64,000 bases of DNA from Hyalangium minutum (GCF_000737315.1 NZ_JMCB01000028.1:62001-126000); one strand, 5' to 3'; counted from the stretch's first letter, positions 2,409 to 64,000 are shown. The notes: generated from the letters alone by a model not told the origin. Program-made: numbers and translations.

Positions 2409-2418
2409 GGCGACGACC

Positions 2419-38500: not shown

Positions 38501-41500
38501 TCTTGAGCCAGTCCTGCTCCTGGTTCTTCTGCGTGGTCTCACGCAGGTTGTAGATCATCTGGTTGATGTTGTCCTTCAGCGCGGCCACTTCGCCCTCGGC
38601 GACGACCGTGATGCTGCGGGTCAGGTCGCCCTTGGTCACCGCGGTGGCCACATCGGAGATGGCGCGCAGCTGAGAGGTGAGCGTGCCGGCCAGCTGGTTC
38701 ACGTTGTCCGTGAGCTGGCGCCACGTGCCGCGAGCGCCGGGCACGCGGGCCTGGCCGCCCAGCTTTCCTTCGATACCCACCTCGCGGGCCACCGTCGTCA
38801 CCTGCTCGGCGAAGGTGCCCAGCGTGTCCGTCATGCTGTTGATGGTCTCCGCGAGCGCGGCGACCTCGCCCTTGGCATCCACCACCAGCTTCTGGCCCAG
38901 GTCACCATTGGCGACGGCCGTCACCACCTTGACGATGCCTCGCACCTGCGTGGTGAGGTTGGACGCCATGAAGTTCACGTTGTCCGTGAGGTCCTTCCAC
39001 GTGCCCGCGACACCGGGCACACGGGCCTGGCCGCCCAGCTTCCCCTCGACGCCCACTTCACGGGCCACCGTGGAGACCTGCTCGGCGAAGGTGCCCAGCG
39101 TGTCGGTCATGTTGTTGATGGTCTCCGCGAGCGCGGCGACCTCGCCCTTGGCGTCCACCACCAGCTTCTGCTTCAGGTCGCCATTGGCGACCGCGGTCAC
39201 CACCTTGACGATGCCGCGCACCTGAGTCGTCAGGTTGCGGGCCATGCTGTTCACGTTGTCCGTGAGGTCCTTCCAGGTGCCGGACACGCCGCGCACTTCG
39301 GCCTGGCCGCCCAGCTTTCCTTCCGTACCCACTTCCTTGGCGACGCGGGTCACTTCCGAGGCAAACGAGTTCAGCTGATCCACCATCGTGTTGATGGTGT
39401 TCTTCAGCTCCAGAATCTCGCCCTTCACGTCGACGGTGATCTTCTTGGACAGGTCGCCGTTGGCCACCGCCGTGGTCACCAGGGCGATGTTGCGCACCTG
39501 GGCGGTGAGGTTGGAGGCCATGGAGTTCACGTTGTCCGTGAGGTTCTTCCACGTGCCGGCGACTCCCGGCACCTCGGCCTGGCCGCCCAGCTTTCCTTCC
39601 GTACCCACTTCCTTGGCGACGCGCGTCACTTCCGAGGCGAAGGCGCGCAGCTGATCCACCATCGTGTTGATGGTGCTCTTCAGCTCCAGGATTTCGCCGC
39701 GGGCCTCGACCGAGATCTTCTGCGACAGGTCGCCGTTCGCGACGGCCGTCGTGACCTTGGCGATGTTGCGCACCTGGTCCGTCAGGTTGCCGGCGAGGAC
39801 GTTCACGTTGTCCGTCAGGTCCTTCCACACACCGGACACGCCCTTCACGTCGGCCTGGCCGCCCAGCTTTCCTTCCGTGCCCACTTCCTTGGCGACGCGG
39901 GTCACTTCCGAGGCGAACGCGCGCAGCTGGTCCACCATCGTGTTGATGGTGTTCTTCAGCTCCAGCACCTCGCCCTTCACGCTGACGGTGATCTTCTGGG
40001 ACAGGTCACCATTGGCGACGGCGGTCGTCACCTTGGCGATGTTGCGCACCTGGTCCGTCAGGTTGCCGGTCAGGGCGTTCACGTTGTCCGTCAGGTCCTT
40101 CCAGACGCCGGACACGCCCTTCACCTCGGCCTGGCCGCCCAGCTTGCCCTCGGTACCCACTTCCTTGGCGACGCGGGTCACTTCCGAGGCGAACGCGCGG
40201 AGCTGATCCACCATCGTGTTGATGGTGTCCTTCAGCTGGAGCACCTCGCCCTTCGCATCCACCGTGATCTTCTTGGACAGGTCGCCGTTGGCGACGGCCG
40301 TGGAGACCTCGGCGATGTTTCGCACCTGGGCGGTGAGGTTGTTGGCCAGCAGGTTCACGTTGTTCGTGAGGTCCTTCCACGTGCCGGCGACGCCCGGCAC
40401 CTCGGCCTGGGCGCCCAGCTTCCCTTCCACACCCACCGTGCGGGCGACATCCGTCACCTGCTGCGCGAAGATGGAGAGCGTCTGGGTCATCGCGTTGATC
40501 GTGTCCGCGAGGGCGGCAATCTCACCCTTCGCTTCCACGATCAGCTTCTGGCTCAGGTCACCGTTGGCGACGGCCGTCACCACCTTGACGATGCCGCGCA
40601 CCTGCGTGGTGAGGTTGGAGGCCATGAAGTTCACGTTGTCCGTGAGGTCCTTCCACACACCGGACACTCCGGGCACCACGGCCTGGCCGCCCAGCTTTCC
40701 TTCCGTACCCACTTCCTTGGCGACGCGGGTCACTTCCGAGGCGAAGGCGCGCAGCTGATCCACCATCGTGTTGATGGTGTTCTTCAGCTCCATCACCTCG
40801 CCCTTCGCGTCGACGGTGATCTTGCGGGACAGGTCACCCTTGGCGACCGCCGTCGTCACCTCGGCGATGTTACGAACCTGGTCGGTCAGGTTGTTCGCGA
40901 GCAGGTTCACGTTGTTCGTGAGGTCCTTCCACGTACCGGCCACACCGGGCACCACGGCCTGGGCACCCAGCTTGCCCTCGACGCCCACCGTGCGGGCCAC
41001 GTCGGTCACCTGCTGCGCGAAGATGGAGAGCGTCTCCGTCATCGCGTTGATGGTGTCGGCCAGCTCGGCCACCTCACCCTTGGCGTCCACCTTCAGGCGC
41101 TGGGTCAGGTCGCCGTTGGCGACCGCAGTCACCACCTTGGCGATGCCTCGCACCTGGGTGGTGAGGTTGGAGGCCATGATGTTCACGTTGTCCGTGAGGT
41201 CCTTCCACGTACCGGCAACGCCCTTCACCTCGGCCTGACCACCCAGCTTGCCGTGCGTACCCACCTCGCGAGCGACGCGGGTCACCTCGGCGGCGAAGCT
41301 GTTGAGCTGGTCCACCATCGTGTTGATGGTGTTCTTCAGCTCCAGCACCTCGCCGCGAGCGTCGACGGAGATCTTCTTGGACAGGTCACCCTTCGCGACC
41401 GCCGTCGTCACCAAGGCGATGTTTCGCACCTGGGTGGTGAGGTTGGAGGCCATGAAGTTCACGTTGTCCGTGAGGTCCTTCCACGTACCGGCAACGCCCT

Positions 41501-43451
41501 TCACCTCGGCCTGACCGCCCAGCTTGCCGTCCGTACCCACTTCCTTGGCGACGCGCGTCACTTCGGCGGCGAACGAGTTGAGCTGGTCCACCATCGTGTT
41601 GATGGTGTTCTTCAGCTCCAGCACCTCGCCCTTCACGTCCACGGTGATCTTCTTGGACAGGTCACCCTTGGCCACCGAGGTCGTCACCTCGGCGATGTTT
41701 CGCACCTGGGCGGTGAGGTTGTTCGCCATCAGGTTCACGTTGTCCGTGAGGTCCTTCCACGTCCCTGCGGCACCGGGCACCTGCGCCTGCGCACCCAGCT
41801 TGCCCTCGACACCCACCGTGCGGGCGACGCTGGTCACCTGCTGGGCGAAGACGTTCAGGGTGTCCGTCATGTTGTTCAGCGTGGCGCCCAGGGCCGCAAT
41901 CTCGCCCTGCGACGGCACCTGCAGCTTCTGGCTCAGGTCACCATTGGCGACGGCCGTCACCACCTTGACGATGCCGCGCACCTGGGTGGTGAGGTTGGAG
42001 GCCATGAAGTTCACGTTGTCCGTGAGGTCCTTCCACACACCGGACACGCCCTTCACCTCGGCCTGGCCACCCAGCTTGCCCTCGGTGCCCACTTCCTTGG
42101 CGACGCGGGTCACCTCGGCGGCGAAGCTGTTGAGCTGGTCCACCATCGTGTTGATGGTGTTCTTCAGCTCCAGCACCTCGCCCTTGGCGTCCACCGTGAT
42201 CTTCCGGGACAGGTCGCCCCGAGCTACCGCCGTGGAGACCTCCGCGATGTTTCGAACTTGCGTGGTGAGGTTGGAGGCCATGAAGTTCACGTTGTCCGTG
42301 AGGTCCTTCCACGTACCGGCAACGCCCTTCACATCGGCCTGGCCACCCAGCTTGCCGTCGCTGCCCACTTCCTTCGCGACGCGCGTCACTTCGGCGGCGA
42401 ACGAGTTCAGCTGATCCACCATCGTGTTGATGGTGTCCTTCAGCTGGAGCACCTCGCCCTTGGCGTCCACCGTGATCTTCTTGGACAGGTCACCCTTGGC
42501 CACCGCCGTGGACACCTCGGCGATGTTGCGCACCTGGGCCGTCAGGTTGCTGGCCATGATGTTCACGTTGTCCGTGAGGTCCTTCCACGTACCCGCGACA
42601 CCCTTCACATCGGCCTGGCCACCCAGCTTGCCGTCGCTGCCCACTTCCTTCGCGACGCGCGTCACTTCCGAGGCGAATGCGCGGAGCTGGTCCACCATCG
42701 TGTTCACGGTGGTACCGATGCGGAGGAACTCGCCCTTCACCGACTGGCCGTCGATCTCGAGGGCCATCTTCTGGGTCAGGTCGCCCTCGGCCACCGCCAC
42801 CAGCACGCGGGCCACTTCCGTGGTCGGCAGCACCAGGTCGCCGATCAGCGCGTTGATGGAGTTGACGCTGGTGGCCCAGCCCCCGCGCACGTCTCCGAGG
42901 TTGACGCGCTCACCCATGCGGCCCTCGCGGCCGACCACGCGCTCGACGCGGACCATCTCATCCGTGAAGGTGGCGTTGCGGCCCACCAGCGCGTTGAAGG
43001 CCTGGGCGATCTCGTCCAGCACCGGGTTGCCCGAGGCCTCCGGCAGCCGGACGCTGAAGTCACCGGACTCGGCGGACAGGAGGGCCGTCAGCAGCGGATA
43101 GAGCGGCTCGCCCGGCTTGACCCGCCGCGAAGCTCCCAGCTGGGTACCCCCGATGACGCCCCTGCCGTGGCCATCGCCGTTGCGCTTGGTGCCGTTGCCG
43201 TTGCGCTTGCCATGAGGGCTCGCGGCGGACTCGGCCGCCAGCTCAGCGACAGGCTTGTCCTCGGCCAGCCGGGCCCGGACCCGGTTGCCGGGCTTGGAAC
43301 CGGCCGGGGGAGTCTCGCCTCCAGCGGCGGGTTCCTTACGGCGGGCACCGCGCTTCTTGCCATCGGAGGGTGAGTTGTCGTTCGAGTCCAAGGAGATGAA
43401 CCTCAGCTGAAAATGAAAAAGACGCGCCTCCACGAAGGGGCGCGCGCTCAA
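35568..43451 (-). CDS. Giant poly-HAMP hybrid histidine kinase (NIK1/Os-1/OsaA-like): poly-HAMP, GAF, HisKA, HATPase, three REC
   Basis: 15 GKLG(G/A)QA 92-aa units plus one degenerate unit, [16 protein letters not shown], three receiver domains; true start may be TTG 43391. Confidence 0.93.
38560..42960 (-). repeat. Intragenic 276-bp tandem repeat (92-aa poly-HAMP units)
   Basis: Recurrent GTTCACGTTGTCCGTGAGGTCCTTCCAC blocks at 276-bp period. Confidence 0.92.
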
Positions 43452-45538: not shown

Positions 45539-47368
45539 ATGAAGAAGGTCTTGGGACATTTGGAGGAGCAGCAACAGGGCTTCGCGGTTTCTCCCTTCGT
45601 GACCTTCTTGATGGACCCGTGTTTCGCGCCGCAAGACCGGCTCCGGTTCTTGCCGTGTGTGGCGCCGCTGATGATGGGCTCCTCGGAGCTGGCCAGCAGC
45701 CTTCAGGGCGAGGACAACCCCGTGGAGACGGGGACGACGCCTCCCGAGAGCCCGTACTGGGCGCCGTTCCTGAAGGATCTGCAGCTGCTGGATCTGCACG
45801 CGTTCTCCGACTTCAACTCGATGCTGCAGTTGCTGTGGGGCGAGAACTGCGCCCCGGTGCGCGAGGTGCTCTACGACTTCATCGCGCTGGCGCGCTCGGC
45901 CACCCCGCTGCGGCGGCAGATCCTTCTCATGGCGCTGCAGTCGGTGGGCCAGGTGGCCTTGATTGCGATGGAGCAGGTGGCGCGCGAGCTGGAGGCCAGC
46001 ACCCGCAAGCACCTGAGGACCGTCGACTCGCTGCGCGGCCAGGTGCAGATGCGGCTGCTGGGCGAGGAGCTCCTCGGCGTGGAGATGACCGCCGAGGAGG
46101 AGCAGCAGGCCCTCCGCGACGTCAACCAGGTGTTCTCGCTGGTGGATGAGCTGACCGACTACCTGCTGGAGCACGTGCAGGAGTGGTTCGCCGGCCAGCA
46201 GAAGCCCTCGCGGCAGGCCATCATGGCCGAGCAGATCGCCAAGATGAGCTTCCGGGACTTCGGCAACACGCGCATCGCCTCGCTGTGCAAGTCGGCCGGC
46301 TTCACCTCGGCGGATACCCAGAAGGTGCAGCAGTACTTCACCTTCATGACGGACTCGTGGAGCTCGCGGCTGGTGGGCGAGCACTCTCCTTGGAAGTCCG
46401 ACATCTCGGACGACCACACCCCCTTCGAGCTCTCCATCGCACTGGAGGGCAGCCGCCCCGAGATTCGCTTCCTCATCGAGGCGCAGAACCACCCCACCAC
46501 CCTGCAGACCAGCTGGGATGACGGGCTGGCGCTCAACGAGCGGCTCAACAAGGAGTTCGGCCTCTCGCTGGACCACTTCAACAAGGTGAAGGACCTGTTC
46601 GAGCCGCACAACCCCCAGGCGCGCTTCTCCCTGTGGCACGCCTTCTGCCTCAAGCCGGACCGGGGCGCGGAGATCAAGGTCTACCTCAACCCGCAGGCGC
46701 GCGGCCCCGAGCACGCCAACGCGATTGTGGAGGAGGCGCTGTCTCGGCTGGGCTTCGCCCATGCGTGGCGCTTCCTGTCCCAGGTGGTGATGAAGCGCGG
46801 CGCCCAAGACCAGGTGCTCTACTTCTCCCTGGACATGGGCGGGCAGGCGGTCTCCCGCGTGAAGATTTACGTGGCGCACCGGGATGCGGCCCCCGAGGAC
46901 ATCGAGGCGGCCATGGCCCAGGCCAAGGAGTATGTGGCTGGCGAGGCGCGGGCCTTCTGCGAGGCCATCCAGGGCGATGACAACAAGTTCTCGGCGCCGC
47001 GCTCGACGCTGACGTGCTGGGCGTTCACCTCGGACGACGACGACAAGCCCTACAGCGCCACGCTGCACTGCCCCATCCGCTGCTACGCGGACAACGACCG
47101 GGATGCGCTGCGCCGCGTCCGCGCGGTGCTCGACCCCAAGAGCCACGCGGTGCTGGACCGGTGCGTGTGGGCACTGGCCAACCGGCCGCTGGAGGCCGGC
47201 GTGGGGCTGATTCAGTGGGCCTCCATGCGGCGCGAAGGTGGCCGGGTGCGCACCACCTTCTACCTGGCCACCGAGGCCTACGGCACCGTGGCGCCTCGCA
47301 AGTCCACCTCGCACCGCGTCCACGTGCCGGACCTGATGAACGCCGAGATCTTCCAGCTCAGCGCTTGA
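45539..47368 (+). CDS. Fusion: degenerate heme-oxygenase-like (AetD-like) domain plus tryptophan dimethylallyltransferase (ABBA/DMATS)
   Basis: C-half SDDHTPFELS, IRFLIE, IKVYLNP, LYFSLD, RVKIY, RTTFYLATEAY; N-half MKKVL...F...D...P.DRL..LPC.A...W..FL.DL.LL helical pattern. Confidence 0.82.
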   Translation: MKKVLGHLEEQQQGFAVSPFVTFLMDPCFAPQDRLRFLPCVAPLMMGSSELASSLQGEDNPVETGTTPPESPYWAPFLKDLQLLDLHAFSDFNSMLQLLWGENCAPVREVLYDFIALARSATPLRRQILLMALQSVGQVALIAMEQVARELEASTRKHLRTVDSLRGQVQMRLLGEELLGVEMTAEEEQQALRDVNQVFSLVDELTDYLLEHVQEWFAGQQKPSRQAIMAEQIAKMSFRDFGNTRIASLCKSAGFTSADTQKVQQYFTFMTDSWSSRLVGEHSPWKSDISDDHTPFELSIALEGSRPEIRFLIEAQNHPTTLQTSWDDGLALNERLNKEFGLSLDHFNKVKDLFEPHNPQARFSLWHAFCLKPDRGAEIKVYLNPQARGPEHANAIVEEALSRLGFAHAWRFLSQVVMKRGAQDQVLYFSLDMGGQAVSRVKIYVAHRDAAPEDIEAAMAQAKEYVAGEARAFCEAIQGDDNKFSAPRSTLTCWAFTSDDDDKPYSATLHCPIRCYADNDRDALRRVRAVLDPKSHAVLDRCVWALANRPLEAGVGLIQWASMRREGGRVRTTFYLATEAYGTVAPRKSTSHRVHVPDLMNAEIFQLSA

Positions 47369-47536
47369 ATGCTCGCCGGGAGCACCTCCTCGCGACGCCC
47401 ACCTGCCGGGTCGGTTCTCAGCATCTCATGATCTGAGAATCCGCCGCACCCGCGGGGGGCTATCGCGTTGTTCCGCTTTTGCGAGGATACTCAGCACGTA
47501 AGGCGCTCGCTCCCGGGCACAGGAGTCATCCCCTTC

Positions 47537-50500
47537 ATGCATATGTCCAGGTTCCCTCTGTCGGCGCTGCTCGCCGCTGTCTGCGCGCTGCTGACTGCCT
47601 GCGGTCAGACCTCCCCTGATACGTCCACTCCCGTCCATCAGGAGTTCGCCCTGCCAGGTTCGGACGGCGATCTGACGCTCTCGGACGGCTTCACCGTGGT
47701 GAATCAGTACGCCGTCCTCGCGGCGGACGCGAGCGCGGGTGCCAGCAGCATCCAGGTGACAGACATCACCCAACTGACGTCGCCCCGGTCGGGCCCGCTG
47801 GAGGGTGGAGATCTCGTCTTCATCATCCAGATGCAGGGCGCCACCATCGACACCTCGAACAGCCCCACGTACGGCGCCATCACCAGCCTCAACAGCGCGG
47901 GCTTCCATGAGTTCGCGGTGGTCCGCCGCGTGGAGGGCAACACCATCCACCTGGCCTGCGCTGGACTGCAGCACAGCTACGCCACCGCGGGCCGGACCCA
48001 GGTGGTGCGCGTGCCGCAGTTCAACAACCTCACCATCGAGAACGGCGCCTTCGTCCAGGCGCGGCCCTGGGACGGGCAGCGCGGCGGCGTCGTGGTGGTG
48101 CACGTCAACGGCGTCACCACGCTGGATGGAACCATCACCACCACCGGCCAGGGCTTCCGGGGAGGCGCCGTCGAGAACGCCTCGCGCACCGCTCCGGCGC
48201 AGGTCACCCTTTATCTCTCGGGCGATGCACGGGATGGCGCCGAGAAGGGCGAGAGCATCGCCGGCGATACCACCGTCTATGACGCCCTGGGCGGACGCTA
48301 TGGCCGCGGTGCCCCAGCCAACGGCGGCGGCGGCGGCAACAGCCACAACGCGGGCGGCGGCGGCGGCGCCAACGGCAACAACGGCCGGCCCTGGAGTGGC
48401 CAGGGCGTCATGAATGCCTCGGTGGCAGGGGCCTCCGCGTGGCAGCTCGATCCGGGCTACATCGCCAATGGCAACGCGCTGACGGACTCCTCCGGTGGCG
48501 GACGCGGCGGCTACAGCGCCGCCATCTCCAACCAGAACGCGCTCACCGTGGGTCCCAACAACGCCGCGTGGGGTGGCGACTACCGCGCGGAGGCCGGCGG
48601 CCTGGGAGGGCGGCCGCTCAACAATGACGTCACCTCTCGGCTGTTCCTCGGCGGTGGTGGCGGCGCGGGCGACGCGAACAACAGCGCGGCGAACCCCGGC
48701 GGCAACGGCGGCGGTCTCGTGTACCTCGTCTCGCCCACCGTGGTGGGCAGTGGAACCATCGAGGCCAACGGCGAAAACGCCGGCAGCACCCTGCCCGCGC
48801 ACAATGATGCGCCGGGCGGCGGCGGCGGTGGCGGCACCGTCGTGGTCCTCAGCGACGACCTGTCGAGCATTGCCGTGGAGGCCTTCGGTGGCCAGGGCGG
48901 CAACCAGCTCTCCATCACCACCGAGGCCGAGGGCCCCGGCGGCGGTGGTGGCGGCGGCTTCATCGCGGTGAGCGCGGGCGCTCCGCCGCTGTTCGCCCAC
49001 GGAGGACTGTCGGGAACCACCGGCTCGTCGTTGCTGACCGAGTTCCCTGCCAACGGCGCCACCTATGGGGCCAGTGGCCAAACGGTGCGCGTCCCCAACC
49101 CGGATCCGTCCTGGCTCACGTGCGCGCCGCTGGATCTCGCGGTGACGATCACCGACGGGCAAACCACCACCCTTCCGGGAGCCACCGTCACCTATACGGT
49201 GACCGTCACCAACGGCGGCCCCTCGAACGCGACGAATGCTCCTGTCTCCGTGCCGCTGCCCACCCAGGCCTCGGGCGGCAGCTGGACGTGCGCGGGCGCT
49301 GGAGGCGCCACCTGTCAGGCGGCCAGTGGCACCGGGGGCATCTCGACGAACGTCTCCGTCCCCGTCGGCGGCACGGTGACCTTCACCTTCACCGTCAACG
49401 TGAGCCTCTCCGCCACCGGCACGCTCGTGGCGACGGCCACCGTCTCCGAACCGGCCACGCTGACGGATGCCAACCTCGCGAACAACACCGCTACCGACAC
49501 GGACACGATCCTCCCCGTGGCGGATCTCTCGGTGACCCTGACGGACTCGGCGGATCCTTCTCCGGAGCGGAGCCCGGTCGTCTACACCGTCCAGGTGGGC
49601 AACGGCGGCCCCAACACCGCCAACTCCGTCACTGTCACGTTCCCGGTCCCGGCCAGCACCACCTTCACCAGCGCGACGGGCGCGGGGTGGAGCTGCTCGC
49701 AGGCCGCGGGCACGGTCACCTGCACCCTTCCGACCCTGGCACCGGGCAACGCCCCGGCCATCGCCATCACCGTGCAGCCCACCATCACCAGCGGGACGAT
49801 CAACGCCTCGGTCTCCGTGAGCTCGCCGACGATCGATCAGGTCCAGGCCAACAACTCCGACACGGAGACCACGGCGATCGTCGCGGTGAACGATGCCCCC
49901 GTGAACACCGTTCCCGGGCCCCAGACCACGGCCGAGGACACCTCGCTCGTCTTCTCCTCCGCGAGGGGCAATGCGCTCTCCATCTTCGACGAGGATGCGG
50001 GCAGCCAGCCCGTCAAGGTGACCCTCACCGTGACGCACGGCACCCTCACCCTGGGCAGCACCGTGGGGCTGAGCTTCTCGGCGGGCGATGGCTCGGTGGA
50101 CGCGACGATGACCTTCACGGGCTCACAGGCCGATATCAACGCCGCGATCGCGAGCGTCACCTACGCTCCGGACGCCAACTACTACGGCAGCGCCACCCTC
50201 ACGATCACCACGGACGACCAGGGCAACACCGGTAGCGGCGGACCGAAGAGTGACACGGACACCGTGGCCATCACCGTCACCCCAGTGAACGATCCGCCCA
50301 CCGCCGTGGATGACGCGGTCACGATGACGACCATTACGACGGCACGGCCCATCGACGTGCTGGCCAATGACTCGGCGGCGCCTGACGACGGAGAGACCCT
50401 CACGGTCATCACCGTGACGCAGGGCAGCCGGGGTGGCACTGTGACCATCATCGAAGGGGGCGCTCGCGTCACCTACCAGCACACGCCCAACTTCAGCGGC

Positions 50501-52828
50501 ATCGAGACCTTCACCTACACCATCAGCGACGGGAAGGGCGGCACGGCGACCGCCACCGTCACGGTCACCGTGCGCGGAGACCGCGATGGCGACGGGCTGC
50601 CGGATGACGACGAGCCGGGCCACGGCACCGACCCGAACAATCCGGACACGGATGGTGACGGCATCCCGGACGGCACCGAAGTCCACACGGGCACCGACCC
50701 GACCAAGCCCGACACCGATGGCGACGGCCTGCCCGACGGCAAGGAGGACGAAAACCACAACGGCGTGGTCGACCCGGGCGAGACCGACCCGCGCAACCCC
50801 GACACCGACGGCGGTGGCTTCAATGATGGGGAAGAGGAGGATCGCGGCACGGATCCGCTGAACCCGAACGACGACGTGGAGCGCCGCGTGGTCGGCAGTG
50901 GCTGCAGCAGCTCGGGCAACAGCGGCCTGACGGGCCTCGCGGGGATGATGCTCGCCCTGGTGTTCCTGACGCGCCGGAGCCGCCCGGCGCTCTCCATGGG
51001 CCGCTCGCGGAGCCTCCGCTCCCTGGTGACGCTCGGAGCCGTGGGGGCGCTGACCGCCTCCGGCGCCTCGTGGGCGCAGGGCACCTCGGCCGCCATCGAC
51101 GTGCAGCAGTTCCGGCCCGCCCCGGGCAAGGCCGACGTGCTCGGCCTGCACAGCCCGGGAGTGCAGGGGCACTTGAACTGGCAAGCAGGGCTCTTCTTCA
51201 ACTACGCCCACGAGCCGCTCGTCGTCATCAACCCGGCCAACGCCGACCGGCTGCAGCACCTGGTGCGCAACCAGCTCGGCTTCGACCTGATCGGCTCCAT
51301 CGGCCTGGGCGAGCGCTTCGAGCTGGGCCTCGTGGCCCCGCTCAAGATCGAGCGCGGTGAGTTCGGCGAGCTGCCCACCGGCAACCTGGAGCAGTCGTGG
51401 AAGGGCGGCCTGGGTGACCTCCGGCTCGTCCCCAAGGTGTTACTTCTAGAACGCGACACCCTGCGGCTGGGGCTCGCGGCGCCGATGGTGATGCCCACGG
51501 CGGGCGCCTCGGAGCTTCAGGGCCAGAAGGGGTTTGGGGTGCAGCCGCGGCTCGCGGCGGACTACGCCTTCGAGAGCGGCACCCGGCTGCTGGCCAACCT
51601 GGGCCTCAACGTGCGCAGCCGCCAGGAGCTGAGCAACCTCTCGGTGGGCAATGAGCTGAGCTACAGCGTGGGCGCCGCCATTCCTTTCGAGGTGAAGGAG
51701 CACCCGTTCACCGGCCTCGCCTCGCTGGGCGGTGCCCTGGGCCTGGGCGCCACGGGCGGAGCCAATGAGGAGGAGCGGCCGCTCGAGTTTCAGGCGGGGC
51801 TCCAGACGCGGGTGAGCAAGTCCATCGTGGCCTCGCTGGGCATGGGCAAGGGCCTCACGCTGGGCTACGGCATGCCCGTGTTCCGCGTGTTCACCGGCTT
51901 CTCGTATGCCTTCGAGCAGCCGCCCCGCCCCAAGGACACGGACGACGACGGCTTCCCCGACATCAGCGACGCCTGCCCCCTCGACGCCGAGGACAAGGAC
52001 GGCTTCCAGGACGAGGACGGCTGCCCGGACCTCGACAATGATCAGGACGGTGTCCCCGACACGGCGGACAAGTGCCCGAACGTGCCCGAGGACAAGGACG
52101 GCTTCCAGGACGAGGACGGCTGCCCCGACCCCGACAATGACGGGGACGGCATCGTGGACGGCCAGGACACGTGCGTGCTGGAGGCCGAGGACAAGGACGG
52201 CTTCCAGGACGAGGACGGCTGCCCGGACCTCGACAATGACCAGGACGGCGTCCCCGACGGCTCGGACAAGTGCCCCAACGCGGCCGAGGACAAGGACGGC
52301 TTCCAGGACGAGGACGGCTGCCCCGACCCCGACAACGACCGCGATGGCGTGCCCGACGCGGACGACCTGTGCCCCACGGAGCAGGAGACCATCAACGGCG
52401 TGGAGGACGAGGACGGCTGCCCGGACAAGGGCGAGAGCAAGGTCCAGGTCACCAGCCAGAAGATCGTCATCAAGGAGAAGGTCTACTTCGACACCAACAA
52501 GGACGTGGTGCTGGAGCGCTCCTTCCCGCTGCTGAAGCAGGTGGCCCTGGTGCTCAAGGCCAACCCGCAGCTGAAGAAGGTCCGCATCGAGGGCCACACC
52601 GATGACCGGGCGGATGACGCCTTCAACCTGGACCTGTCCCAACGCCGCGCGGGCAGCGTGCTCAAGTACCTGGTGGAGGTTGCAGGCATCGACCCGAACC
52701 GCCTCATCTCCGAGGGCTTCGGCGAGACACGCCCGGTGGACACCAACAAGACGGCCGCGGGCCGCGAGAACAACCGCCGCGTCGAGTTCGTCATCATCGA
52801 AGTCGAAGGCGACAGCTCGCCGCAGTGA
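47537..52828 (+). CDS. Large surface lipoprotein/adhesin fused to an OmpA-family (TraB-like) module via an internal MYXO-CTERM-like motif
   Basis: LTAC lipobox, Gly-rich domain, two DUF11-like repeats, cadherin-like VND.P repeats, DxDGDG repeats, GSGCSSS-TM-RRSR, barrel, TSP3 repeats, IEGHTD...LSQRRA...NRRVEF. Confidence 0.88.
51934..52430 (+). repeat. Five TSP type-3 Ca-binding repeats (99-bp period)
   Basis: GAGGACAAGGACGGCTTCCAGGACGAGGACGGCTGCCC at 51989, 52088, 52187 and 52286, plus a divergent fifth unit. Confidence 0.9.
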
Positions 52829-53811: not shown

Positions 53812-55071
53812 ATGCCGACCCGGAAGCCCGAGGACTCCACCGCGCCCGTCGCGCCGCCCTCCGACGAAGAGCAGCGAAGGCTCGCCCAGAGCAACAATGC
53901 CTTCGCCGTGGAGCTCTGGCGCCAGGTGAATGGAAGTCCCGGCAACCTCGCGCTCTCGCCCGCGAGCATCACCCTGGCGCTCGCGATGGCCTGGGGCGGT
54001 GCCCGCGGTGAGACCGCGAGCGAGATGAAGCAGGTGCTCCACTTCCAGGGCAGCGCCGATGAAGTCATGGCCTCGGCGGGCCAGCTGCTCCAGGCGTGGA
54101 ACACGAGCACCGGGAACACCGTGCTGCGCGTGGTGAACCGGCTGTTCGGCTCGAAGAGCTACACCTTCGAGCAGCCCTACCTGGACAAGACGAAGGCCAC
54201 CTTCAACGCCCCGCTCGAGCCGGTGGACTTCGACAACGACATCGAGGCCACGCGCGAGTCCATCAACGCCTGGGTGGCGCGGCAGACGGAGGACCGCATC
54301 CAGGGCCTGCTGCCCGAGCGGAGCCTGAGGCCCCGTCTGACGAAGCTCGTGCTCGTCAATGCGGTCTACTTCAAGGCGGTCTGGGCCCACCTCTTCTCGG
54401 AGGACCAGACCGTGAGCGAGCCGTTCTTCGTCACGTCCACGGTGAAGAAGGACGCGGACCTGATGCGCCGCACGGGCAGCTACGCCTATGCCGAGCAGGA
54501 TGGCGTGAAGGTGCTGGAGCTCCCCTATCGGGACGGGGCGTGGTCGATGATCTTCGCCCTGCCGGACGCAGTGGATGGGCTCGCGGAGGTGGAGCGGAAC
54601 CTGTCGAGCGAGGTGCTCAACGACTGGGTCACCGCGCTGCGCACCGAGACCGTGAACGTCGCGCTGCCGCGCTTCGAGGTCAACCCGGAGGCGCCAGTGG
54701 AGCTGGGAGACGCCCTGATGAACCTGGGCATGGCGCGGGCCTTCGACGCGCAGCGGGCGGACTTCACGGCGATGGCGAACCCTCCCAACTCCAGCGAGCG
54801 CCTCCATATCAGCAAGGTCTTCCACAAGGCCTTCGTGAAGGTGAACGAGCAGGGCACCGAGGCCGCCGCCGCCACCGCCGTCGTGATGATGGCGCGGAGT
54901 GCGATGGGCCGGCAGCGCGAGCCTAAGGACTTCCGCGCGGACCACCCGTTCCTCTTCTTCCTGCGCGACAAGGCCTCGGGGATGATCCTCTTCATGGGGC
55001 GCGTCTCCGAGCCGCCGGTCTCCACCGCTCCCAAGCGGAGTGAGCCCAACCTCGCTGGACGGGGGGAATGA
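53812..55071 (+). CDS. Serpin (serine protease inhibitor)
   Basis: NNAFA, NLALSPASI, LVLVNAVYFKAVW, HKAFVKVNEQGTEAAAAT, FRADHPFLFFLRD..SG.ILFMGRV. Confidence 0.95.
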   Translation: MPTRKPEDSTAPVAPPSDEEQRRLAQSNNAFAVELWRQVNGSPGNLALSPASITLALAMAWGGARGETASEMKQVLHFQGSADEVMASAGQLLQAWNTSTGNTVLRVVNRLFGSKSYTFEQPYLDKTKATFNAPLEPVDFDNDIEATRESINAWVARQTEDRIQGLLPERSLRPRLTKLVLVNAVYFKAVWAHLFSEDQTVSEPFFVTSTVKKDADLMRRTGSYAYAEQDGVKVLELPYRDGAWSMIFALPDAVDGLAEVERNLSSEVLNDWVTALRTETVNVALPRFEVNPEAPVELGDALMNLGMARAFDAQRADFTAMANPPNSSERLHISKVFHKAFVKVNEQGTEAAAATAVVMMARSAMGRQREPKDFRADHPFLFFLRDKASGMILFMGRVSEPPVSTAPKRSEPNLAGRGE

Positions 55072-59703: not shown

Positions 59704-62700
59704 ATGCTCACGCCCCTGCGAATCACCGCCATCCTGATGGGGATGTGCGGACTCCTCTCCGCGTGCGAGGCGCGCCTCGAACCCGGCGCCGCACAGGTAC
59801 CGCAGGAGGGCACTCAATCCGCGGCGCTCGCTGCGCCACAGGGTTCGTCCTCCAAGCTCCTCAAGGCGAAAGAACACGGCATCCCCGGCCGGTACATCGT
59901 CGTGCTCGAGGACAAGGGCACCCGCAACCTCCAGGGCGCGCCGATGGAGGTTCGCAAGGTCTCGGATGTGCTGGCCCGCGCGCACGGCGGCTCCGTGCGG
60001 CGCGTCTACGCGCACGCGCTCCGGGCCTTCACCGTGTCGATGACAGAAGAGGAGGCTCAGCGCATGAGCGAGGATCCGAGCGTGCGCTACGTGGAGCAGG
60101 AGCGCATCTTCAAGGTCAGCGGCGTGCAGCAGTTCCCCATCTCGTGGGGCCTGGACCGCGTGGATCAGCGTCCCCCCACGCTGGATGACCTCTACACCTA
60201 CGAGTACACGGGCGCCGGCGTTCACGCGTACATCGTCGATACGGGCATCCGCAGCACTCACCAGGAGTTCGCCGGCCGCATGGGCAATGGCTTCGACGCC
60301 GTCGGCGACGGCCTGGGCACCGAGGACTGCCGAGGCCACGGCACCCACGTCGCCGGCACGGTGGGCGGCACCCTCTCGGGCGTGGCCAAGGAGGTCACCC
60401 TCCACTCGGTGCGCGTCATCACGTGCTCGGGCGAGGGCACGCTGGAGCAGGTCATCGCGGGCATCGACTGGATCTCCGCGAACCACGTGAAGCCGGCCGT
60501 GGTCAACATGAGCATCGGCTCCGAGGCGGACCAGGCCGTGGATGACGCGGTGACAGGCTCCATCGGCTACGGCCTCACCTACGTCGTCGCCGCAGGCAAC
60601 GAGTCCGTGAATGCCTGCATCCGCTCTCCGGCGCGCACGCCGCTGGCCATCACCGTCGGCGCGATCAGCGAGCTCGACTCCATGTCGTTCTTCTCCAACT
60701 ACGGCGGCTGCGTGGACCTGTTCGCGCCCGGCGAGACGATCACCTCCGCCTGGTACACCGGCGACAGTGAGTTCTACGATCTGGACGGCACCTCGATGGC
60801 CACCCCCCACGTCTCGGGAGCCGTCGCCCTCTTCCTCGAAGGCCACCCCAACGCCACGCCGGACGAGGTGGCGGAGGAGATCGTCGCCCGCGGCACGCGC
60901 AACCTGCTGACCGACCTGGGCAATGGCTCGCCGAACGTGCTGCTCCACACCGCGTGCATGGGCTCCACGGACTCGGTGCCGCCCCGGGTGGAGCTCACCG
61001 CCCCGGCCGAGGGCGCCACGCTCTCCGGCCTCGTGCAGCTTCAGGCCATCGCGAGCGACAACCTGGGCGTCTCCAAGGTGGAGTTCTACTTGAACGGAAA
61101 GCTCATCGGCACGGCCTCGGCCGCGCCCTTCGAGATCACCTGGGACAGCACCGAGGAGGACAACGGCCCCTCCACCCTCAGCGTGCGTGCCTTCGACAAC
61201 GGCTGCAACAGCCAGGAGGCGTCTATCGCCGTCACCCTCCACAACGCGGGCAAGGCGAGCTTCGACCCGAACCTGCTGGCGCCCGTCTGCCTCGGCACGG
61301 GCACCCAGTGCGACTCCGGCACGCTGCTCAACGGCCGCGGCCCTCTGATGGGCCCCGAGCTGAACACGCCCAACACCCTGGGCGGAAGCTGCCCGGACGG
61401 TCTGGAGGGCTGGTACCAGATCGATCCGTCCATCGAGCGCATCCGGATCGTCCATGACGGCGGCTCGCTGCTCTCGCCGGGCAAGCAGGTGCGCGTCGAG
61501 GTCAGCTTCTTCGCGAGCTACGAGCCCTTCTTCGAGCGGCTGGACCTCTTCTCCGCCTCCGACGCGCGGAACCCGGTGTGGGCGCAGTTCGCCAGCCTCG
61601 TGCCCAAGGACATTGGCGCGAACCTGATGTCCACCTCCTTCATCATTCCCGCAGGGAGCAGCCTTCAGGCGGTCCGCGCCGTCTACCGGTTCGGAGGCAG
61701 CCCCTCCGCGTGCCCGATGGGCAACATCGATGAGGCGGATGACCTCGCCTTCACCGTGATCGAGGAGACAGACACCGCGCCGCCCACCGCCACGCTGACC
61801 TCGCCGGCAGCGGGCTCGAGCGTCAAGGGCACTGTCACGCTCGTCGGCACGGCGAGCGACAACTTCGCGGTCACGCGCGTCGAGTTCTACGACGGAGACA
61901 CGCTGGTGGGGACGGACTCCTCGGTCCCCTACAGCACGACGTGGGATACGAAGGCGACACAGAACGGAAGCCACTCGCTGACCGCCCGAGCCTACGACTC
62001 GGCGGGCTTCGTGGGGGTCTCCCCGGCGGTGAGCGTCACGGTGAACAACGACGTGACGCCGCCCACCGTGGCCTTCGCCGCGCCGGCCGCGGGCGCCACC
62101 GTGTCGGGCACCCTCACCCTCAACGTGACGGCGACCGACAACGTGGGCGTCACCAAGGTGGAGTTCTATGACGGCGCCACCCTGCTGGCCACGGATGCCA
62201 CCTCGCCGTACACCTTCTCGTGGGCCACGCGAACGGTGCCCAATGGCACCCACGTCCTCACCGCGAAGGGCTACGACAGCTCGGGCAACGTCGGCACGGT
62301 GGAGCGGACGGTGACGATCGACAACGACTTCACCCCGCCCACGGCCACCGTCACCGCTCCGGCCGAGGGCGCCTCGGTGAGCGGAACGGTGGCGTTCACG
62401 GCCACGGCCACGGACGACCGGTCCACCCTCTCCAGGGTGGAGTTCTACCTGGACGGCACCCTGCTCGGCACCGACACCTCGGCGCCGTTCAGCATCAACT
62501 ACAACACCCGGCTCCAGGCCAACGGCGTCAAGGTGCTCACCGCCAAGGCCTATGATTCGTGGAGCAACGTGGGCACCTCGGCCCCGGTGAGTGTCACGTT
62601 CGACAACGACTTCACCCCGCCCACCGTCACGCTCACCGCGCCCACCGAGGGCACCTCGCTGATCGGCACGATCATCCTCTCGGCCACGGCCGCGGATGAA

Positions 62701-64000
62701 CGGTCGGCCATGTCACGGGTGGAGTTCTACCTGGGCACCACCCTGATCGGCTCCGACAGCTCGGCGCCGTACAGCATCAACTACAACACCCGCCAACAGG
62801 CCAACGGCGCCAAGGTGCTCACCGCCAAGGCCTATGATGCGGTGGGCAACGCCGGTACCTCCGTGCCGGTGAACGTGGTGATCGACAACGACTACGCCGC
62901 GCCCACCGTGGCGGTCACGGGCCTCGCGGAGGGAGCGGCGCTGACGGGCACCCTCACGTTCACGGCTACGGCCACGGATGAGCGGTCGACCCTGTCCCGG
63001 GTGGACTTCTACGCGGACACCACGCTGATCGGCTCCGACACCACCTCGCCGTACAGCATCAGCTACAACACCCGCCAGCTGGCCAACGGCGCCAAGGTGA
63101 TCACCGCGAAGGCCTATGACACGTGGAACAACGTGGGGACTTCCGCGCCGGTGAACGTGACGTTCGACAATGACTTCGCAGCACCCACGGTGGCACTCAC
63201 CAGCCCCACCGACGGGGCCCCCGTGAGCGACACCCTCACCCTCTCGGCCACCGCCAGCGACGACCGGAGCACCGTCTCCAAGGTGGAGTTCTACGTGGGC
63301 AACACCTTGATCGGCTACGACACCACGTCGCCGTACAGCCTCAGCTACAACACGCGCCTCCAGACAACCAACGGCGCCAAGGTGCTCACCGCCAAGGCCT
63401 ATGACTCATGGAACAACGTGAGCATCTCGGCGCCGGTGAACGTGACGTTCGACAATGACTTCGTCGCCCCCGCGGTGACGCTCACCCTCCCTGCCGAGGG
63501 CTCCACGGTGAGCGAGACGCTCACCCTCTCGGCCACGGCCAGCGACGACAAGACCGCCATCTCCAAGGTGGAGTTCTACGTGGGCACGAGCCGGCTGGCG
63601 ACCGTCACCACGCCCCCGTACACGTACAGCTACAACACGCGCCTGCTCGCCAACGGCGCCAAGGTGCTCACCGCCAAGGCCTATGACGCGTGGAACAATG
63701 TGGGTACCTCGGCGGCGGTCAACGTCACGTTCGACAACGACTTCACCGGACCTACGGTGGCGCTCACCGAGCCATCTGAAGGAGCCACACTGCGCGACAC
63801 GGTCACCTTCTCGGCCACGGCCAGCGACGACAGGACCGCCGTCTCCAAGGTGGAGTTCTACGTGGGCACGAGCCGGCTGGCGACCGTCACCACGGCCCCC
63901 TACACCTACAGCTACAACACCCGCCTGCTCGCCAATGGCGCCAAGGTGCTCACCGCCAAGGCCTATGACGCGTGGAACAACGTGACGACCTCGGCGGCGG
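59704..64000 (+). CDS. Subtilase (S8) lipoprotein with I9 propeptide and many Ig-like (Big_7-type) repeats; partial, runs off the window
   Basis: AGGAGG RBS, LSAC lipobox, IPGRYIVVL, AYIVDTGI (Asp), GHGTHVAG (His), GTSMATPHV (Ser); no stop before 64000, hence absent from the ORF track. Confidence 0.92.
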   Translation, partial: MLTPLRITAILMGMCGLLSACEARLEPGAAQVPQEGTQSAALAAPQGSSSKLLKAKEHGIPGRYIVVLEDKGTRNLQGAPMEVRKVSDVLARAHGGSVRRVYAHALRAFTVSMTEEEAQRMSEDPSVRYVEQERIFKVSGVQQFPISWGLDRVDQRPPTLDDLYTYEYTGAGVHAYIVDTGIRSTHQEFAGRMGNGFDAVGDGLGTEDCRGHGTHVAGTVGGTLSGVAKEVTLHSVRVITCSGEGTLEQVIAGIDWISANHVKPAVVNMSIGSEADQAVDDAVTGSIGYGLTYVVAAGNESVNACIRSPARTPLAITVGAISELDSMSFFSNYGGCVDLFAPGETITSAWYTGDSEFYDLDGTSMATPHVSGAVALFLEGHPNATPDEVAEEIVARGTRNLLTDLGNGSPNVLLHTACMGSTDSVPPRVELTAPAEGATLSGLVQLQAIASDNLGVSKVEFYLNGKLIGTASAAPFEITWDSTEEDNGPSTLSVRAFDNGCNSQEASIAVTLHNAGKASFDPNLLAPVCLGTGTQCDSGTLLNGRGPLMGPELNTPNTLGGSCPDGLEGWYQIDPSIERIRIVHDGGSLLSPGKQVRVEVSFFASYEPFFERLDLFSASDARNPVWAQFASLVPKDIGANLMSTSFIIPAGSSLQAVRAVYRFGGSPSACPMGNIDEADDLAFTVIEETDTAPPTATLTSPAAGSSVKGTVTLVGTASDNFAVTRVEFYDGDTLVGTDSSVPYSTTWDTKATQNGSHSLTARAYDSAGFVGVSPAVSVTVNNDVTPPTVAFAAPAAGATVSGTLTLNVTATDNVGVTKVEFYDGATLLATDATSPYTFSWATRTVPNGTHVLTAKGYDSSGNVGTVERTVTIDNDFTPPTATVTAPAEGASVSGTVAFTATATDDRSTLSRVEFYLDGTLLGTDTSAPFSINYNTRLQANGVKVLTAKAYDSWSNVGTSAPVSVTFDNDFTPPTVTLTAPTEGTSLIGTIILSATAADERSAMSRVEFYLGTTLIGSDSSAPYSINYNTRQQANGAKVLTAKAYDAVGNAGTSVPVNVVIDNDYAAPTVAVTGLAEGAALTGTLTFTATATDERSTLSRVDFYADTTLIGSDTTSPYSISYNTRQLANGAKVITAKAYDTWNNVGTSAPVNVTFDNDFAAPTVALTSPTDGAPVSDTLTLSATASDDRSTVSKVEFYVGNTLIGYDTTSPYSLSYNTRLQTTNGAKVLTAKAYDSWNNVSISAPVNVTFDNDFVAPAVTLTLPAEGSTVSETLTLSATASDDKTAISKVEFYVGTSRLATVTTPPYTYSYNTRLLANGAKVLTAKAYDAWNNVGTSAAVNVTFDNDFTGPTVALTEPSEGATLRDTVTFSATASDDRTAVSKVEFYVGTSRLATVTTAPYTYSYNTRLLANGAKVLTAKAYDAWNNVTTSAA
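61771..64000 (+). repeat. Tandem Ig-like repeats of ~94 aa (~282 bp), at least 8 here plus one at ~60975
   Basis: Recurring ND...PTV.LT.P.EG...ATA.DD...KVEFY...NGAKVLTAKAYD; the last two units are nearly identical at DNA level. Confidence 0.88.

What the first reader, a model, noticed from the sequence alone, without database searches (positions are those of the whole stretch)
50881..51080. Internal MYXO-CTERM plus a second signal peptide: an adhesin and its TraB-like anchor encoded as one polyprotein
Seen: within one 5.3-kb ORF, the adhesin part ends in [30 protein letters not shown] (Cys, TM, Arg cluster). It is followed immediately by [28 protein letters not shown] (basic-hydrophobic, with an SPase I-like site; in-frame ATG at 50996) and then barrel, TSP3 repeats and an OmpA domain. 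The N-terminus also has a lipobox. Established: TraA ends in MYXO-CTERM, and its partner TraB is barrel-TSP3-OmpA, normally encoded as two genes. Inference: double membrane processing releases a surface adhesin and its dedicated outer-membrane partner in 1:1 ratio, giving a TraAB-parallel adhesion or recognition system. Similar fusions may have been noted before, so novelty needs checking.
Basis: partly seen in the sequence, partly recalled or inferred. Interest (0 to 1): 0.75.

Follow-up and report, generated by a model that had tools for sequence, protein, structure and literature searches.

The report
Adhesin fused to its TraB-like anchor
One myxobacterial gene encodes a large surface adhesin and a TraB-like outer-membrane anchor, joined by an internal sorting tag and a second signal peptide; the design is real and widespread, but it was already described in 2025 for a Myxococcus xanthus relative.

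Summary
Window 47537-52828 (+) is one uninterrupted 1763-codon frame. It contains GSGC, a hydrophobic helix and RRSR (a MYXO-CTERM, which passes the NCBIfam cut-offs). A 16-residue loop of net charge +6 follows, then a signal-peptide-like segment ending SWA|Q. After that come a 12-stranded barrel, TSP3 repeats and an OmpA domain.

It is not an artefact. The same junction occurs in 167 of 216 related proteins and in 53 of 75 resolvable genome loci. Only about 10% have a Met at the junction, and 91% keep a small-x-Ala|Gln/Asp/Glu site. Relatives also exist as two genes, in either order, or as a barrel gene alone. In those, the second hydrophobic segment is the ordinary N-terminal signal peptide.

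The C-terminal half aligns with TraB along its whole length but scores below the TraB cut-off. The N-terminus is a lipoprotein with an AgmC_N-like domain, also below cut-off. The protein is therefore a paralog of AgmC/MXAN_5598.

Guo, Haft and Wall (mBio 2025) already described MXAN_5598 as an adhesin, internal MYXO-CTERM, barrel and OmpA protein resembling TraA plus TraB.

Best explanation: a Sec-exported polyprotein forms an inner-membrane helical hairpin, which myxosortase and signal peptidase I cut. Cleavage itself is untested. This is a new member of a known kind.

The parts
47537..52828 (+). Whole gene: 1763 codons plus stop, encoding an AgmC-family adhesin fused to a TraB-like module
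   Evidence: Single ORF; third-position GC 0.90; full-length homologs at 45-66% identity
47537..47602 (+). N-terminal lipoprotein signal peptide with lipobox L-T-A-C (Cys22)
   Evidence: Sequence; a lipobox is present in nearly all homolog N-termini; weak match to a lipoprotein signal model
47642..49216 (+). Conserved N-terminal domain, AgmC_N-like and Gly-rich, about 535 residues
   Evidence: NF047640 at 182-195 bits, below the cut-off of 275; 50-79% identical across 119 homologs; AlphaFold2 confident only for about residues 20-185
49133..50569 (+). Variable adhesin repeats: CARDB, two DUF11 domains, Big_9/cadherin-like
   Evidence: Pfam
50645..50875 (+). Bacterial TSP3 (Asp-rich, calcium-type) repeats just before the sorting tag
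   Evidence: PF18884 with 3 stretches; CglD-like match
50894..50983 (+). Internal MYXO-CTERM: GSGC (Cys1123), helix H1 [15 protein letters not shown] (50927-50971), then RRSR
   Evidence: TIGR03901 at 21.1 bits against cut-off 20; TIGR03382 at 19.3 against 15.85; H1 mean Kyte-Doolittle hydropathy 2.08
50972..51019 (+). Arg-rich loop [16 protein letters not shown], net charge +6, predicted cytoplasmic; contains the non-conserved ATG 50996
   Evidence: Family median loop is 6 residues with net charge +4; a Met is present in 17 of 167
51020..51076 (+). Second signal-peptide-like segment [19 protein letters not shown]; predicted signal peptidase I cut after Ala1180 (51076|51077), leaving Gln1181 at the new N-terminus
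   Evidence: [AVST]xA|[QDE] in 152 of 167 fused homologs; the same segment is the N-terminal signal peptide in unfused relatives
51080..51916 (+). 12-stranded outer-membrane beta-barrel of the TraB / FapF / COG4313 type
   Evidence: TraB HMM positions 18-291, E 1e-25; PF13557 at 31.8 bits against cut-off 22; AlphaFold2 pLDDT 87; Foldseek matches FapF (E 7.5e-11, TM 0.62-0.67) and 4rl8
51917..52483 (+). Asp-rich TSP3-type repeat linker (repeated [13 protein letters not shown] units)
   Evidence: Sequence; falls within TraB HMM positions 316-506
52484..52777 (+). OmpA-like peptidoglycan-binding domain
   Evidence: PF00691 at 76.8 bits

Best explanation
The gene encodes an envelope polyprotein, a paralog of the Myxococcus xanthus gliding-motility protein AgmC (MXAN_5598). 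All the steps below are inferred; none has been shown directly.

1. The N-terminal lipoprotein signal peptide sends the chain through Sec, and the roughly 1100-residue adhesin reaches the periplasm.
2. H1, the helix of the MYXO-CTERM tag, stops transfer. The Arg-rich loop stays in the cytoplasm.
3. H2 restarts translocation. H1 and H2 therefore form a helical hairpin in the inner membrane.
4. Signal peptidase I cuts after SWA and frees the barrel-TSP3-OmpA half. That half inserts into the outer membrane through BAM and binds peptidoglycan.
5. Myxosortase (MrtX) cuts the MYXO-CTERM tag at or near the lipidated Cys. The adhesin goes to the cell surface, by analogy with TraA through the type II secretion system.
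6. The two products then associate as TraA and TraB do, giving a wall-anchored surface adhesin. The 1:1 ratio is fixed by translation.
For: - Continuous frame, with all motifs present.
- The junction is conserved. It scored in 167 of 216 related proteins; the loop median is 6 residues with net charge +4; a signal-peptidase-type site is present in 152 of 167.
- 114 of the top 150 hits from a barrel-only profile search carry a long upstream region.
- 53 of 75 resolvable genome loci are fused.
- A Met occurs at the junction in only 17 of 167, and not in the closest relatives P0011, P0005 and P0123. Separate translation is therefore not the conserved route.
- The barrel's conserved first motif starts 5-10 residues after the AxA site. 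An uncleaved chain could not reach the outer membrane (inference).
- In unfused relatives H2 is the N-terminal signal peptide. Corallococcus loci L048, L051 and L062 compared with fused L050 and L061 show this, as do the stand-alone proteins.
- The two halves also occur as two genes: adhesin then barrel in L040, L047 and L052, and barrel then adhesin in L002.
- TraA and TraB form a 1:1 complex, and AlphaFold places the C-terminal head of TraA on the TraB barrel (PMC12045341).
- MrtX cleaves MYXO-CTERM (PMC11980579).
- Sorting tags that are not at the C-terminus can be processed (Abdul Halim 2017, cited).
- MXAN_5598 was detected in outer-membrane and vesicle proteomes (PMC4158809).
Against: - There is no direct evidence of either cleavage for this protein or for any family member.
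- No dedicated signal-peptide or topology predictor was available. H2 has only moderate hydrophobicity (mean Kyte-Doolittle 1.21).
- It is unknown whether MrtX accepts a tag that is followed by a second helix.
- No myxosortase gene lies in the window, so its presence in this genome is assumed.
- The adhesin would carry a lipid at both ends, which has no studied precedent.
Confidence: 0.7

Rival explanations
1. The barrel half is translated on its own from the internal ATG at 50996, so the locus behaves as two overlapping cistrons and the fusion is incidental.
For: An in-frame ATG lies exactly at the start of the signal-peptide-like segment. A GGAG sits upstream at 50976-50979.
Against: The adhesin frame has no stop, so the full chain is made in any case. 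The GGAG lies 16 nt from the ATG, which is too far for a typical ribosome-binding site. A Met is present at the junction in only 17 of 167 fused homologs, and is absent from the closest relatives and from the AgmC ortholog L016.
Confidence: 0.08
2. The barrel is the adhesin's own export pore, like an autotransporter or the FapF amyloid secretion channel, and is not mainly an anchor.
For: The best structural matches are the polypeptide transporter FapF (E 7.5e-11) and other 12-stranded barrels, including the autotransporter BrkA beta-domain. The order, passenger first and barrel last, resembles type V secretion.
Against: An inner-membrane hairpin between passenger and barrel is incompatible with autotransporter threading. 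MYXO-CTERM proteins use the type II secretion system (PMC11980579). TraA and TraB reach the outer membrane independently of each other (PMC12045341). Stand-alone barrel genes with no adjacent adhesin exist (L053, L054). The match to FapF is at the level of fold only, with 14-16% identity.
Confidence: 0.12
3. Sequencing or assembly artefact, or a recent pseudogene: a lost stop codon or a frameshift has merged two genes.
For: traA and traB overlap by only 4 bases, so a small change could fuse such a pair.
Against: The same in-frame junction is found in dozens of independent genomes and metagenomes across several genera. Third-position GC is high along the whole frame. The junction features are conserved while the sequence diverges.
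Confidence: 0.01
4. The chain is not cut at H2. It stays as one protein tethered in the inner membrane by the hairpin and spans the envelope.
For: No cleavage data exist. H2 is only moderately hydrophobic.
Against: Only about 5 residues separate the AxA site from the barrel's first conserved motif, so a barrel still tethered to the inner membrane could not insert into the outer membrane. The AxA|Q site is conserved. The equivalent segment is a cleavable N-terminal signal peptide in unfused relatives.
Confidence: 0.05

Closest known systems
MXAN_5598 of Myxococcus xanthus (named AgmC by NCBIfam NF047640), as described by Guo, Haft and Wall, mBio 2025 (PMC11980579)
   Same: Large N-terminal adhesin, internal MYXO-CTERM, then an outer-membrane barrel and an OmpA domain in a single ORF. 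The authors proposed that the N-terminal part is processed and surface-anchored, and compared the layout with TraA plus TraB. The ortholog in Myxococcus sp. Y35 (L016) has the same junction and the same N-terminal domain.
   Different: The window protein scores below the AgmC_N cut-off (195 against 275). It does not lie between ftsA and ftsZ; its neighbours are a DMATS-like prenyltransferase gene and a serpin gene. It is shorter (1763 against about 2750 residues) and has a different repeat content, so it is a paralog. The text passages retrieved from the paper call internal tags rare and do not mention the second signal peptide.
TraA/TraB outer-membrane exchange system of M. xanthus
   Same: A MYXO-CTERM surface protein paired with a partner built as signal peptide, barrel, TSP3 repeats and OmpA. 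The partner is homologous to the window's C-terminal half along its full length. The complex is 1:1.
   Different: TraA and TraB are two genes that overlap by 4 bases. TraA has a PA14-like variable domain, Cys-rich repeats and an ordinary signal peptide; the window protein has none of these domains and carries a lipobox. The TraB model scores 278 bits against a cut-off of 700.
Non-C-terminal sorting tags processed by sortase-like enzymes (Haloferax volcanii ArtA substrate, Abdul Halim et al. 2017; LPXTG, Navarre and Schneewind 1994)
   Same: A three-part tag (motif, helix, basic cluster) that still works when more protein follows it (cited).
   Different: These are different enzymes and organisms. 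In the window protein the downstream part is a complete second secreted protein with its own signal peptide.
Bradyrhizobium japonicum FbcH cytochrome b/c1 precursor (recalled from memory, not checked here)
   Same: A bacterial membrane polyprotein split at an internal signal peptide, which gives two subunits in a fixed ratio.
   Different: It is an inner-membrane respiratory complex. No second sorting tag, outer-membrane barrel or surface adhesin is involved.
FapF and COG4313 (Pput2725) 12-stranded outer-membrane barrels
   Same: Best fold matches to the barrel (E 7.5e-11, TM 0.62-0.67). The Pfam family PF13557 is matched.
   Different: Sequence identity is 14-16%. Neither has TSP3 or OmpA domains, and there is no evidence that the window barrel transports anything.

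Membership tests
MYXO-CTERM sorting signal (TIGR03901 / TIGR03382) | HMM score above the curated cut-off | tested here: met
   The trimmed segment scores 21.1 against 20 and 19.3 against 15.85. With long flanks, TIGR03901 falls just below at 18.9. 36 of 42 homolog junctions match.
MYXO-CTERM sorting signal (TIGR03901 / TIGR03382) | Invariant Cys in a Gly-rich motif, then a transmembrane helix, then an Arg cluster | tested here: met
   [19 protein letters not shown] and RRSR. Gly and Cys are invariant in alignment A3.
MYXO-CTERM sorting signal (TIGR03901 / TIGR03382) | Location at the extreme C-terminus of the protein | tested here: not met
   About 614 residues follow the RRSR cluster. This is the atypical internal arrangement noted for MXAN_5598.
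MYXO-CTERM sorting signal (TIGR03901 / TIGR03382) | N-terminal signal peptide on the same protein | tested here: met
   Lipoprotein-type signal with lipobox LTAC.
MYXO-CTERM sorting signal (TIGR03901 / TIGR03382) | The genome encodes myxosortase MrtX, and the tag is cleaved by it | not testable with these tools
   No CPBP-family gene was found among the window ORFs scanned. The rest of the genome was not available.
TraB (NF033763, outer membrane exchange protein) | Score at or above the curated cut-off of 700 bits | tested here: not met
   278 bits for the C-terminal half.
TraB (NF033763, outer membrane exchange protein) | Architecture of signal peptide, barrel, TSP3 repeats and OmpA, colinear with TraB | tested here: met
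   Barrel matches HMM positions 18-291. TSP3 and OmpA match positions 316-506. The literature description of TraB agrees.
TraB (NF033763, outer membrane exchange protein) | Encoded next to traA and required for outer-membrane exchange | tested here: not met
   The upstream part is an AgmC_N-type adhesin with no PA14 domain or Cys-rich stalk. The exchange function itself cannot be tested here.
AgmC (NF047640 N-terminal domain; MXAN_5598 orthologs) | AgmC_N score at or above 275 bits | tested here: not met
   182-195 bits. The true ortholog L016 scores 403.
AgmC (NF047640 N-terminal domain; MXAN_5598 orthologs) | Position between ftsA and ftsZ | tested here: not met
   The neighbours are a DMATS-like gene and a serpin gene. 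L016 is flanked by ftsA and ftsZ.
AgmC (NF047640 N-terminal domain; MXAN_5598 orthologs) | Overall design: lipoprotein signal, AgmC_N domain, repeats, internal MYXO-CTERM, signal peptide, barrel, TSP3, OmpA | tested here: met
   The window protein belongs to the wider family as a paralog.
Type Va autotransporter | Passenger joined directly to a C-terminal 12-stranded barrel, with no membrane segments in between | tested here: not met
   Two hydrophobic helices and an Arg-rich loop separate the two parts. BrkA is only a weak fold match.

The most novel reading that the evidence does not exclude
The internal MYXO-CTERM plus signal-peptide hairpin is a general, modular polyprotein joint of Myxococcota and not a rare accident. 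In the barrel-only search it precedes the barrel in about three quarters of the top 150 clusters (50% identity) of this TraB-like barrel family. The same joint links very different adhesins, with whole proteins running from under 1000 to about 6300 residues, to a wall-bound barrel. It has been gained and lost repeatedly. It is cut by two different membrane proteases, which gives strictly 1:1 surface complexes. The adhesin is lipid-anchored at both ends. If correct, this would be the first bacterial outer-membrane complex made by signal-peptidase processing of a polyprotein.
Probability: 0.5. Interest if true: 0.6.

Novelty: new member of a known kind. Interest (0 to 1): 0.42.

Why it matters
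Bacteria seldom make envelope complexes from polyproteins. Here, one translation product would yield a surface adhesin and its peptidoglycan-anchored partner in a fixed 1:1 ratio, the ratio measured for TraA and TraB. The family gives a natural test of two questions: whether myxosortase accepts tags that are not at the C-terminus, and whether an internal signal peptide can restart Sec export. It also links the little-studied gliding-motility gene agmC to the TraAB type of surface machine. Finally, internal tags are the usual state for this barrel family, not the rare case they were reported to be. Each genome holds only one to three copies, so they remain a small fraction of all MYXO-CTERM proteins in a genome.

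Tried and rejected
- The diverse barrel alignment A1 could not be used to scan genomes. A closer alignment, A2, worked.
- A literature search for 'AgmC' with 'Myxococcus' found nothing. The AgmC link therefore rests on the NCBIfam model name and on the ftsA/ftsZ context of L016.
- Haft's myxosortase preprint does not mention internal tags or OmpA fusions.
- My first junction patterns miscounted in both directions. The counts I report come from the rule-based scan and the locus scan, where I reclassified L072 as unfused by eye.
- The AlphaFold2 model of the N-terminal domain was poor (pLDDT 64). Its matches to phage tailspike depolymerases have TM scores of only 0.13-0.15, so I draw no functional conclusion from them.
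- The unfused homolog P0052 has no barrel gene nearby, so linkage of the two halves is common but not universal.
- I considered and rejected an assembly artefact, a classical autotransporter, and membership of TraA, of TraB proper and of AgmC proper. The reasons are given under the rival explanations and the membership tests.

Full report
**Observation.**
The window holds one open frame from 47468 to 52828 on the + strand. The likely start is ATG 47537 (MHMSRF...). The translation has no stop before 52826. Residues 1120-1181 read [61 protein letters not shown]|Q, and the in-frame ATG is at 50996.

The trimmed internal segment passes both NCBIfam MYXO-CTERM models. TIGR03901 scores 21.1 against a cut-off of 20, and TIGR03382 scores 19.3 against 15.85. 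With long flanks the scores were 18.9 and 16.9. A strict pattern for the whole junction occurs once in the six-frame translation of the window and in none of 5000 shuffles of the protein. The only strongly hydrophobic stretches in the 1763 residues are the N-terminal signal peptide, H1 and H2.

**Anatomy of the protein.**
- The N-terminus is a lipoprotein signal peptide with lipobox L-T-A-C. A lipobox is present in nearly all homologs.
- A domain of about 535 residues follows. It matches the NCBIfam model for the N-terminus of the gliding-motility protein AgmC, but at 182-195 bits it falls below the cut-off of 275. This domain is 50-79% identical in all 119 homologs checked.
- Next come CARDB, DUF11 and Big_9/cadherin-like repeats, then TSP3 repeats, and then the junction.
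- After the junction lies a barrel. Its AlphaFold2 model has pLDDT 87 and pTM 0.83. Its best structural matches are the 12-stranded barrels FapF and COG4313, and it passes Pfam PF13557.
- Asp-rich TSP3-type repeats and an OmpA domain complete the protein.
- The barrel alone matches TraB model positions 18-291 (E 1e-25). The TSP3 and OmpA part matches positions 316-506. The C-terminal half is therefore colinear with TraB, but its total of 278 bits is far below the TraB cut-off of 700.

**Is the fusion real?**
A protein search returned many full-length relatives that carry both adhesin domains and an OmpA domain. They come from Hyalangium, Stigmatella, Archangium, Vitiosangium, Cystobacter and uncultured Myxococcota. 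In 78 of the top 120 hits, the barrel is preceded by the same GxGC, helix, RRRR, helix, AxA|Q junction.

A profile built from the barrel alone is blind to what lies upstream. It found 9041 cluster representatives at E ≤ 0.001 and 2160 at E ≤ 1e-30. Of the top 150, 114 have a long upstream region and 36 are stand-alone or fragments.

Across both sets, 167 of 216 proteins with an intact barrel start scored automatically as fused, and most of the 13 not scored also look fused by eye. The loop has a median length of 6 residues and a net charge of +4. H2 has a median length of 20 residues. AxA|Q occurs in 117 of the 167, and the broader [AVST]xA|[QDE] site in 152. A Met occurs in the loop in only 17.

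In one-genome-per-species DNA, 53 loci are fused, 22 are unfused and 2 are cut off by contig ends (I reclassified L072 as unfused by eye). Genomes hold one to three copies. An artefact is excluded.

**Split forms.**
- In Myxococcus sp. Y35, Myxococcus sp. 1LA and M. vastator (L040, L047, L052), an adhesin of 2600-2800 residues ends in a MYXO-CTERM followed by a stop. About 120 nt downstream, a separate barrel gene starts with its own signal peptide.
- At the same locus, M. xanthus AM003 and Myxococcus sp. CA023 have only the barrel gene.
- In a metagenome contig (L002) the barrel-TSP3-OmpA gene lies immediately upstream of the MYXO-CTERM adhesin gene.
- In Corallococcus, fused loci (L050, L061, L034) have unfused counterparts (L048, L051, L062, L063). 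These retain remnants of the lost half, and the same hydrophobic segment now serves as the N-terminal signal peptide.

This is the strongest available evidence that H2 is a signal peptide and that the two halves work as separate polypeptides.

**Mechanism.**
All steps here are inferred. The lipoprotein signal peptide starts Sec export. H1 stops transfer, the Arg-rich loop stays in the cytoplasm, and H2 restarts export, which creates a hairpin in the inner membrane. Signal peptidase I cuts after SWA. The barrel's first conserved motif (AIDVQ) begins only about five residues later, so the barrel could not reach the outer membrane without this cut. Myxosortase removes the MYXO-CTERM helix, and the adhesin goes to the surface.

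The literature supports the parts:
- MrtX cleaves MYXO-CTERM, and these proteins use the type II secretion system (PMC11980579).
- traA and traB overlap by 4 bases (PMC3325183).
- TraA and TraB form a 1:1 complex, the TraA C-terminal head is predicted to sit on the TraB barrel, and TraB ties the complex to peptidoglycan (PMC12045341).
- Sorting tags that are not at the C-terminus can be processed (references 45 and 46).

**Comparison with what is known.**
Guo, Haft and Wall (2025) wrote that MXAN_5598 has an internal MYXO-CTERM, an N-terminal adhesin and a C-terminal barrel plus OmpA domain. They noted that it resembles TraA and TraB combined, that the N-terminal part is probably processed and surface-anchored, and that the gene lies between ftsA and ftsZ.

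I found the ortholog in Myxococcus sp. Y35 (L016). It lies between ftsA and ftsZ and passes the AgmC_N cut-off with 403 bits, so MXAN_5598 is what NCBIfam calls AgmC. MXAN_5598 has also been seen in outer-membrane and vesicle proteomes.

The window gene is not in the cell-division cluster. Its neighbours are a DMATS-like prenyltransferase gene and a serpin gene. It is a paralog, probably from a relative of Hyalangium: the best match is H. minutum P0011, at 77% identity over the best local alignment (37% of the query) and 87% in the barrel.

This analysis adds the following to the published note:
- the second signal peptide and the hairpin logic;
- the fact that fusion is the majority state of this barrel family;
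- repeated switching between fused and split forms;
- the FapF/COG4313-type fold of the barrel;
- the conserved N-terminal lipobox.

Nothing supports a role in kin recognition or membrane exchange. The adhesin has no TraA-type domains, and genetic screens found only TraAB for exchange (cited).

**Verdict.**
The novelty is low to moderate, because the core idea is already published for a paralog.

Noticed in passing
window 35568-43451 (-): A hybrid histidine kinase of 2627 residues with at least 15 HAMP and 11 HAMP_2 matches, a GAF domain, HisKA and HATPase domains and three receiver domains. This is an unusually long poly-HAMP array.
   Followed up: no
window 53812-55071 (+) and 59704-63999 (+): A bacterial serpin (PF00079, 373 bits) lies 1 kb downstream of the adhesin gene. 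Further on is an S8 subtilase with an I9 propeptide and nine Big_7 repeats, which runs off the end of the window. They may form a protease-inhibitor pair.
   Followed up: no
window 45539-47368 (+): A DMATS-type aromatic prenyltransferase-like protein directly upstream. It passes Pfam PF11991 but scores below the TIGR03429 cut-off. It has an N-terminal extension of about 245 residues with no match.
   Followed up: no
homologs P0077-P0120, aligned to window 47609-49216: Blastocatellia (Acidobacteriota) proteins share the N-terminal domain of about 535 residues at about 50% identity, but they have no barrel. All end in a conserved ...HKLTL...IPVFPPSCQ tail, which may be a different C-terminal sorting signal.
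   Followed up: partly
window 47609-49216 (N-terminal domain): The AlphaFold2 model is confident only for about residues 20-185 (overall pLDDT 64). It gives weak fold matches to phage tailspike depolymerases and polysaccharide lyases (E 2.5e-5, but TM 0.13-0.15). This hints at a beta-helix that binds carbohydrate, but it is not reliable.
   Followed up: partly
L040, L047, L052 compared with L053, L054: The same locus, downstream of a histidine kinase and a sigma-54 response regulator, holds either a barrel gene alone or a MYXO-CTERM adhesin gene of 2600-2800 residues followed by the barrel gene. The adhesin gene is therefore present in some strains and absent in others.
   Followed up: partly
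L048, L051, L062, L063, L043 compared with L050, L061, L034: Corallococcus loci in which the adhesin half seems to have been deleted. Fragments remain ahead of the retained signal peptide, such as TSP3-like 'DGEEDVNHD' and 'VPFPGRRRR'.
   Followed up: partly
L010: A record titled 'Comamonas sp. KCTC 72670' carries a Myxococcus-type fused gene with a 2746-codon frame. The organism label is probably wrong.
   Followed up: no
homologs P0070, P0076, P0085, P0087, P0090, P0097: A divergent subfamily uses the same internal MYXO-CTERM and signal-peptide joint (…RRRR…VPA|SADKLAISIF). Its barrel is more distant and was missed by BLAST, and it is again followed by TSP3 repeats and an OmpA-like end.
   Followed up: partly
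window 222-3519 (+): Two adjacent genes for secretion ATPases of the type II/IV (T2SSE) family.
   Followed up: no
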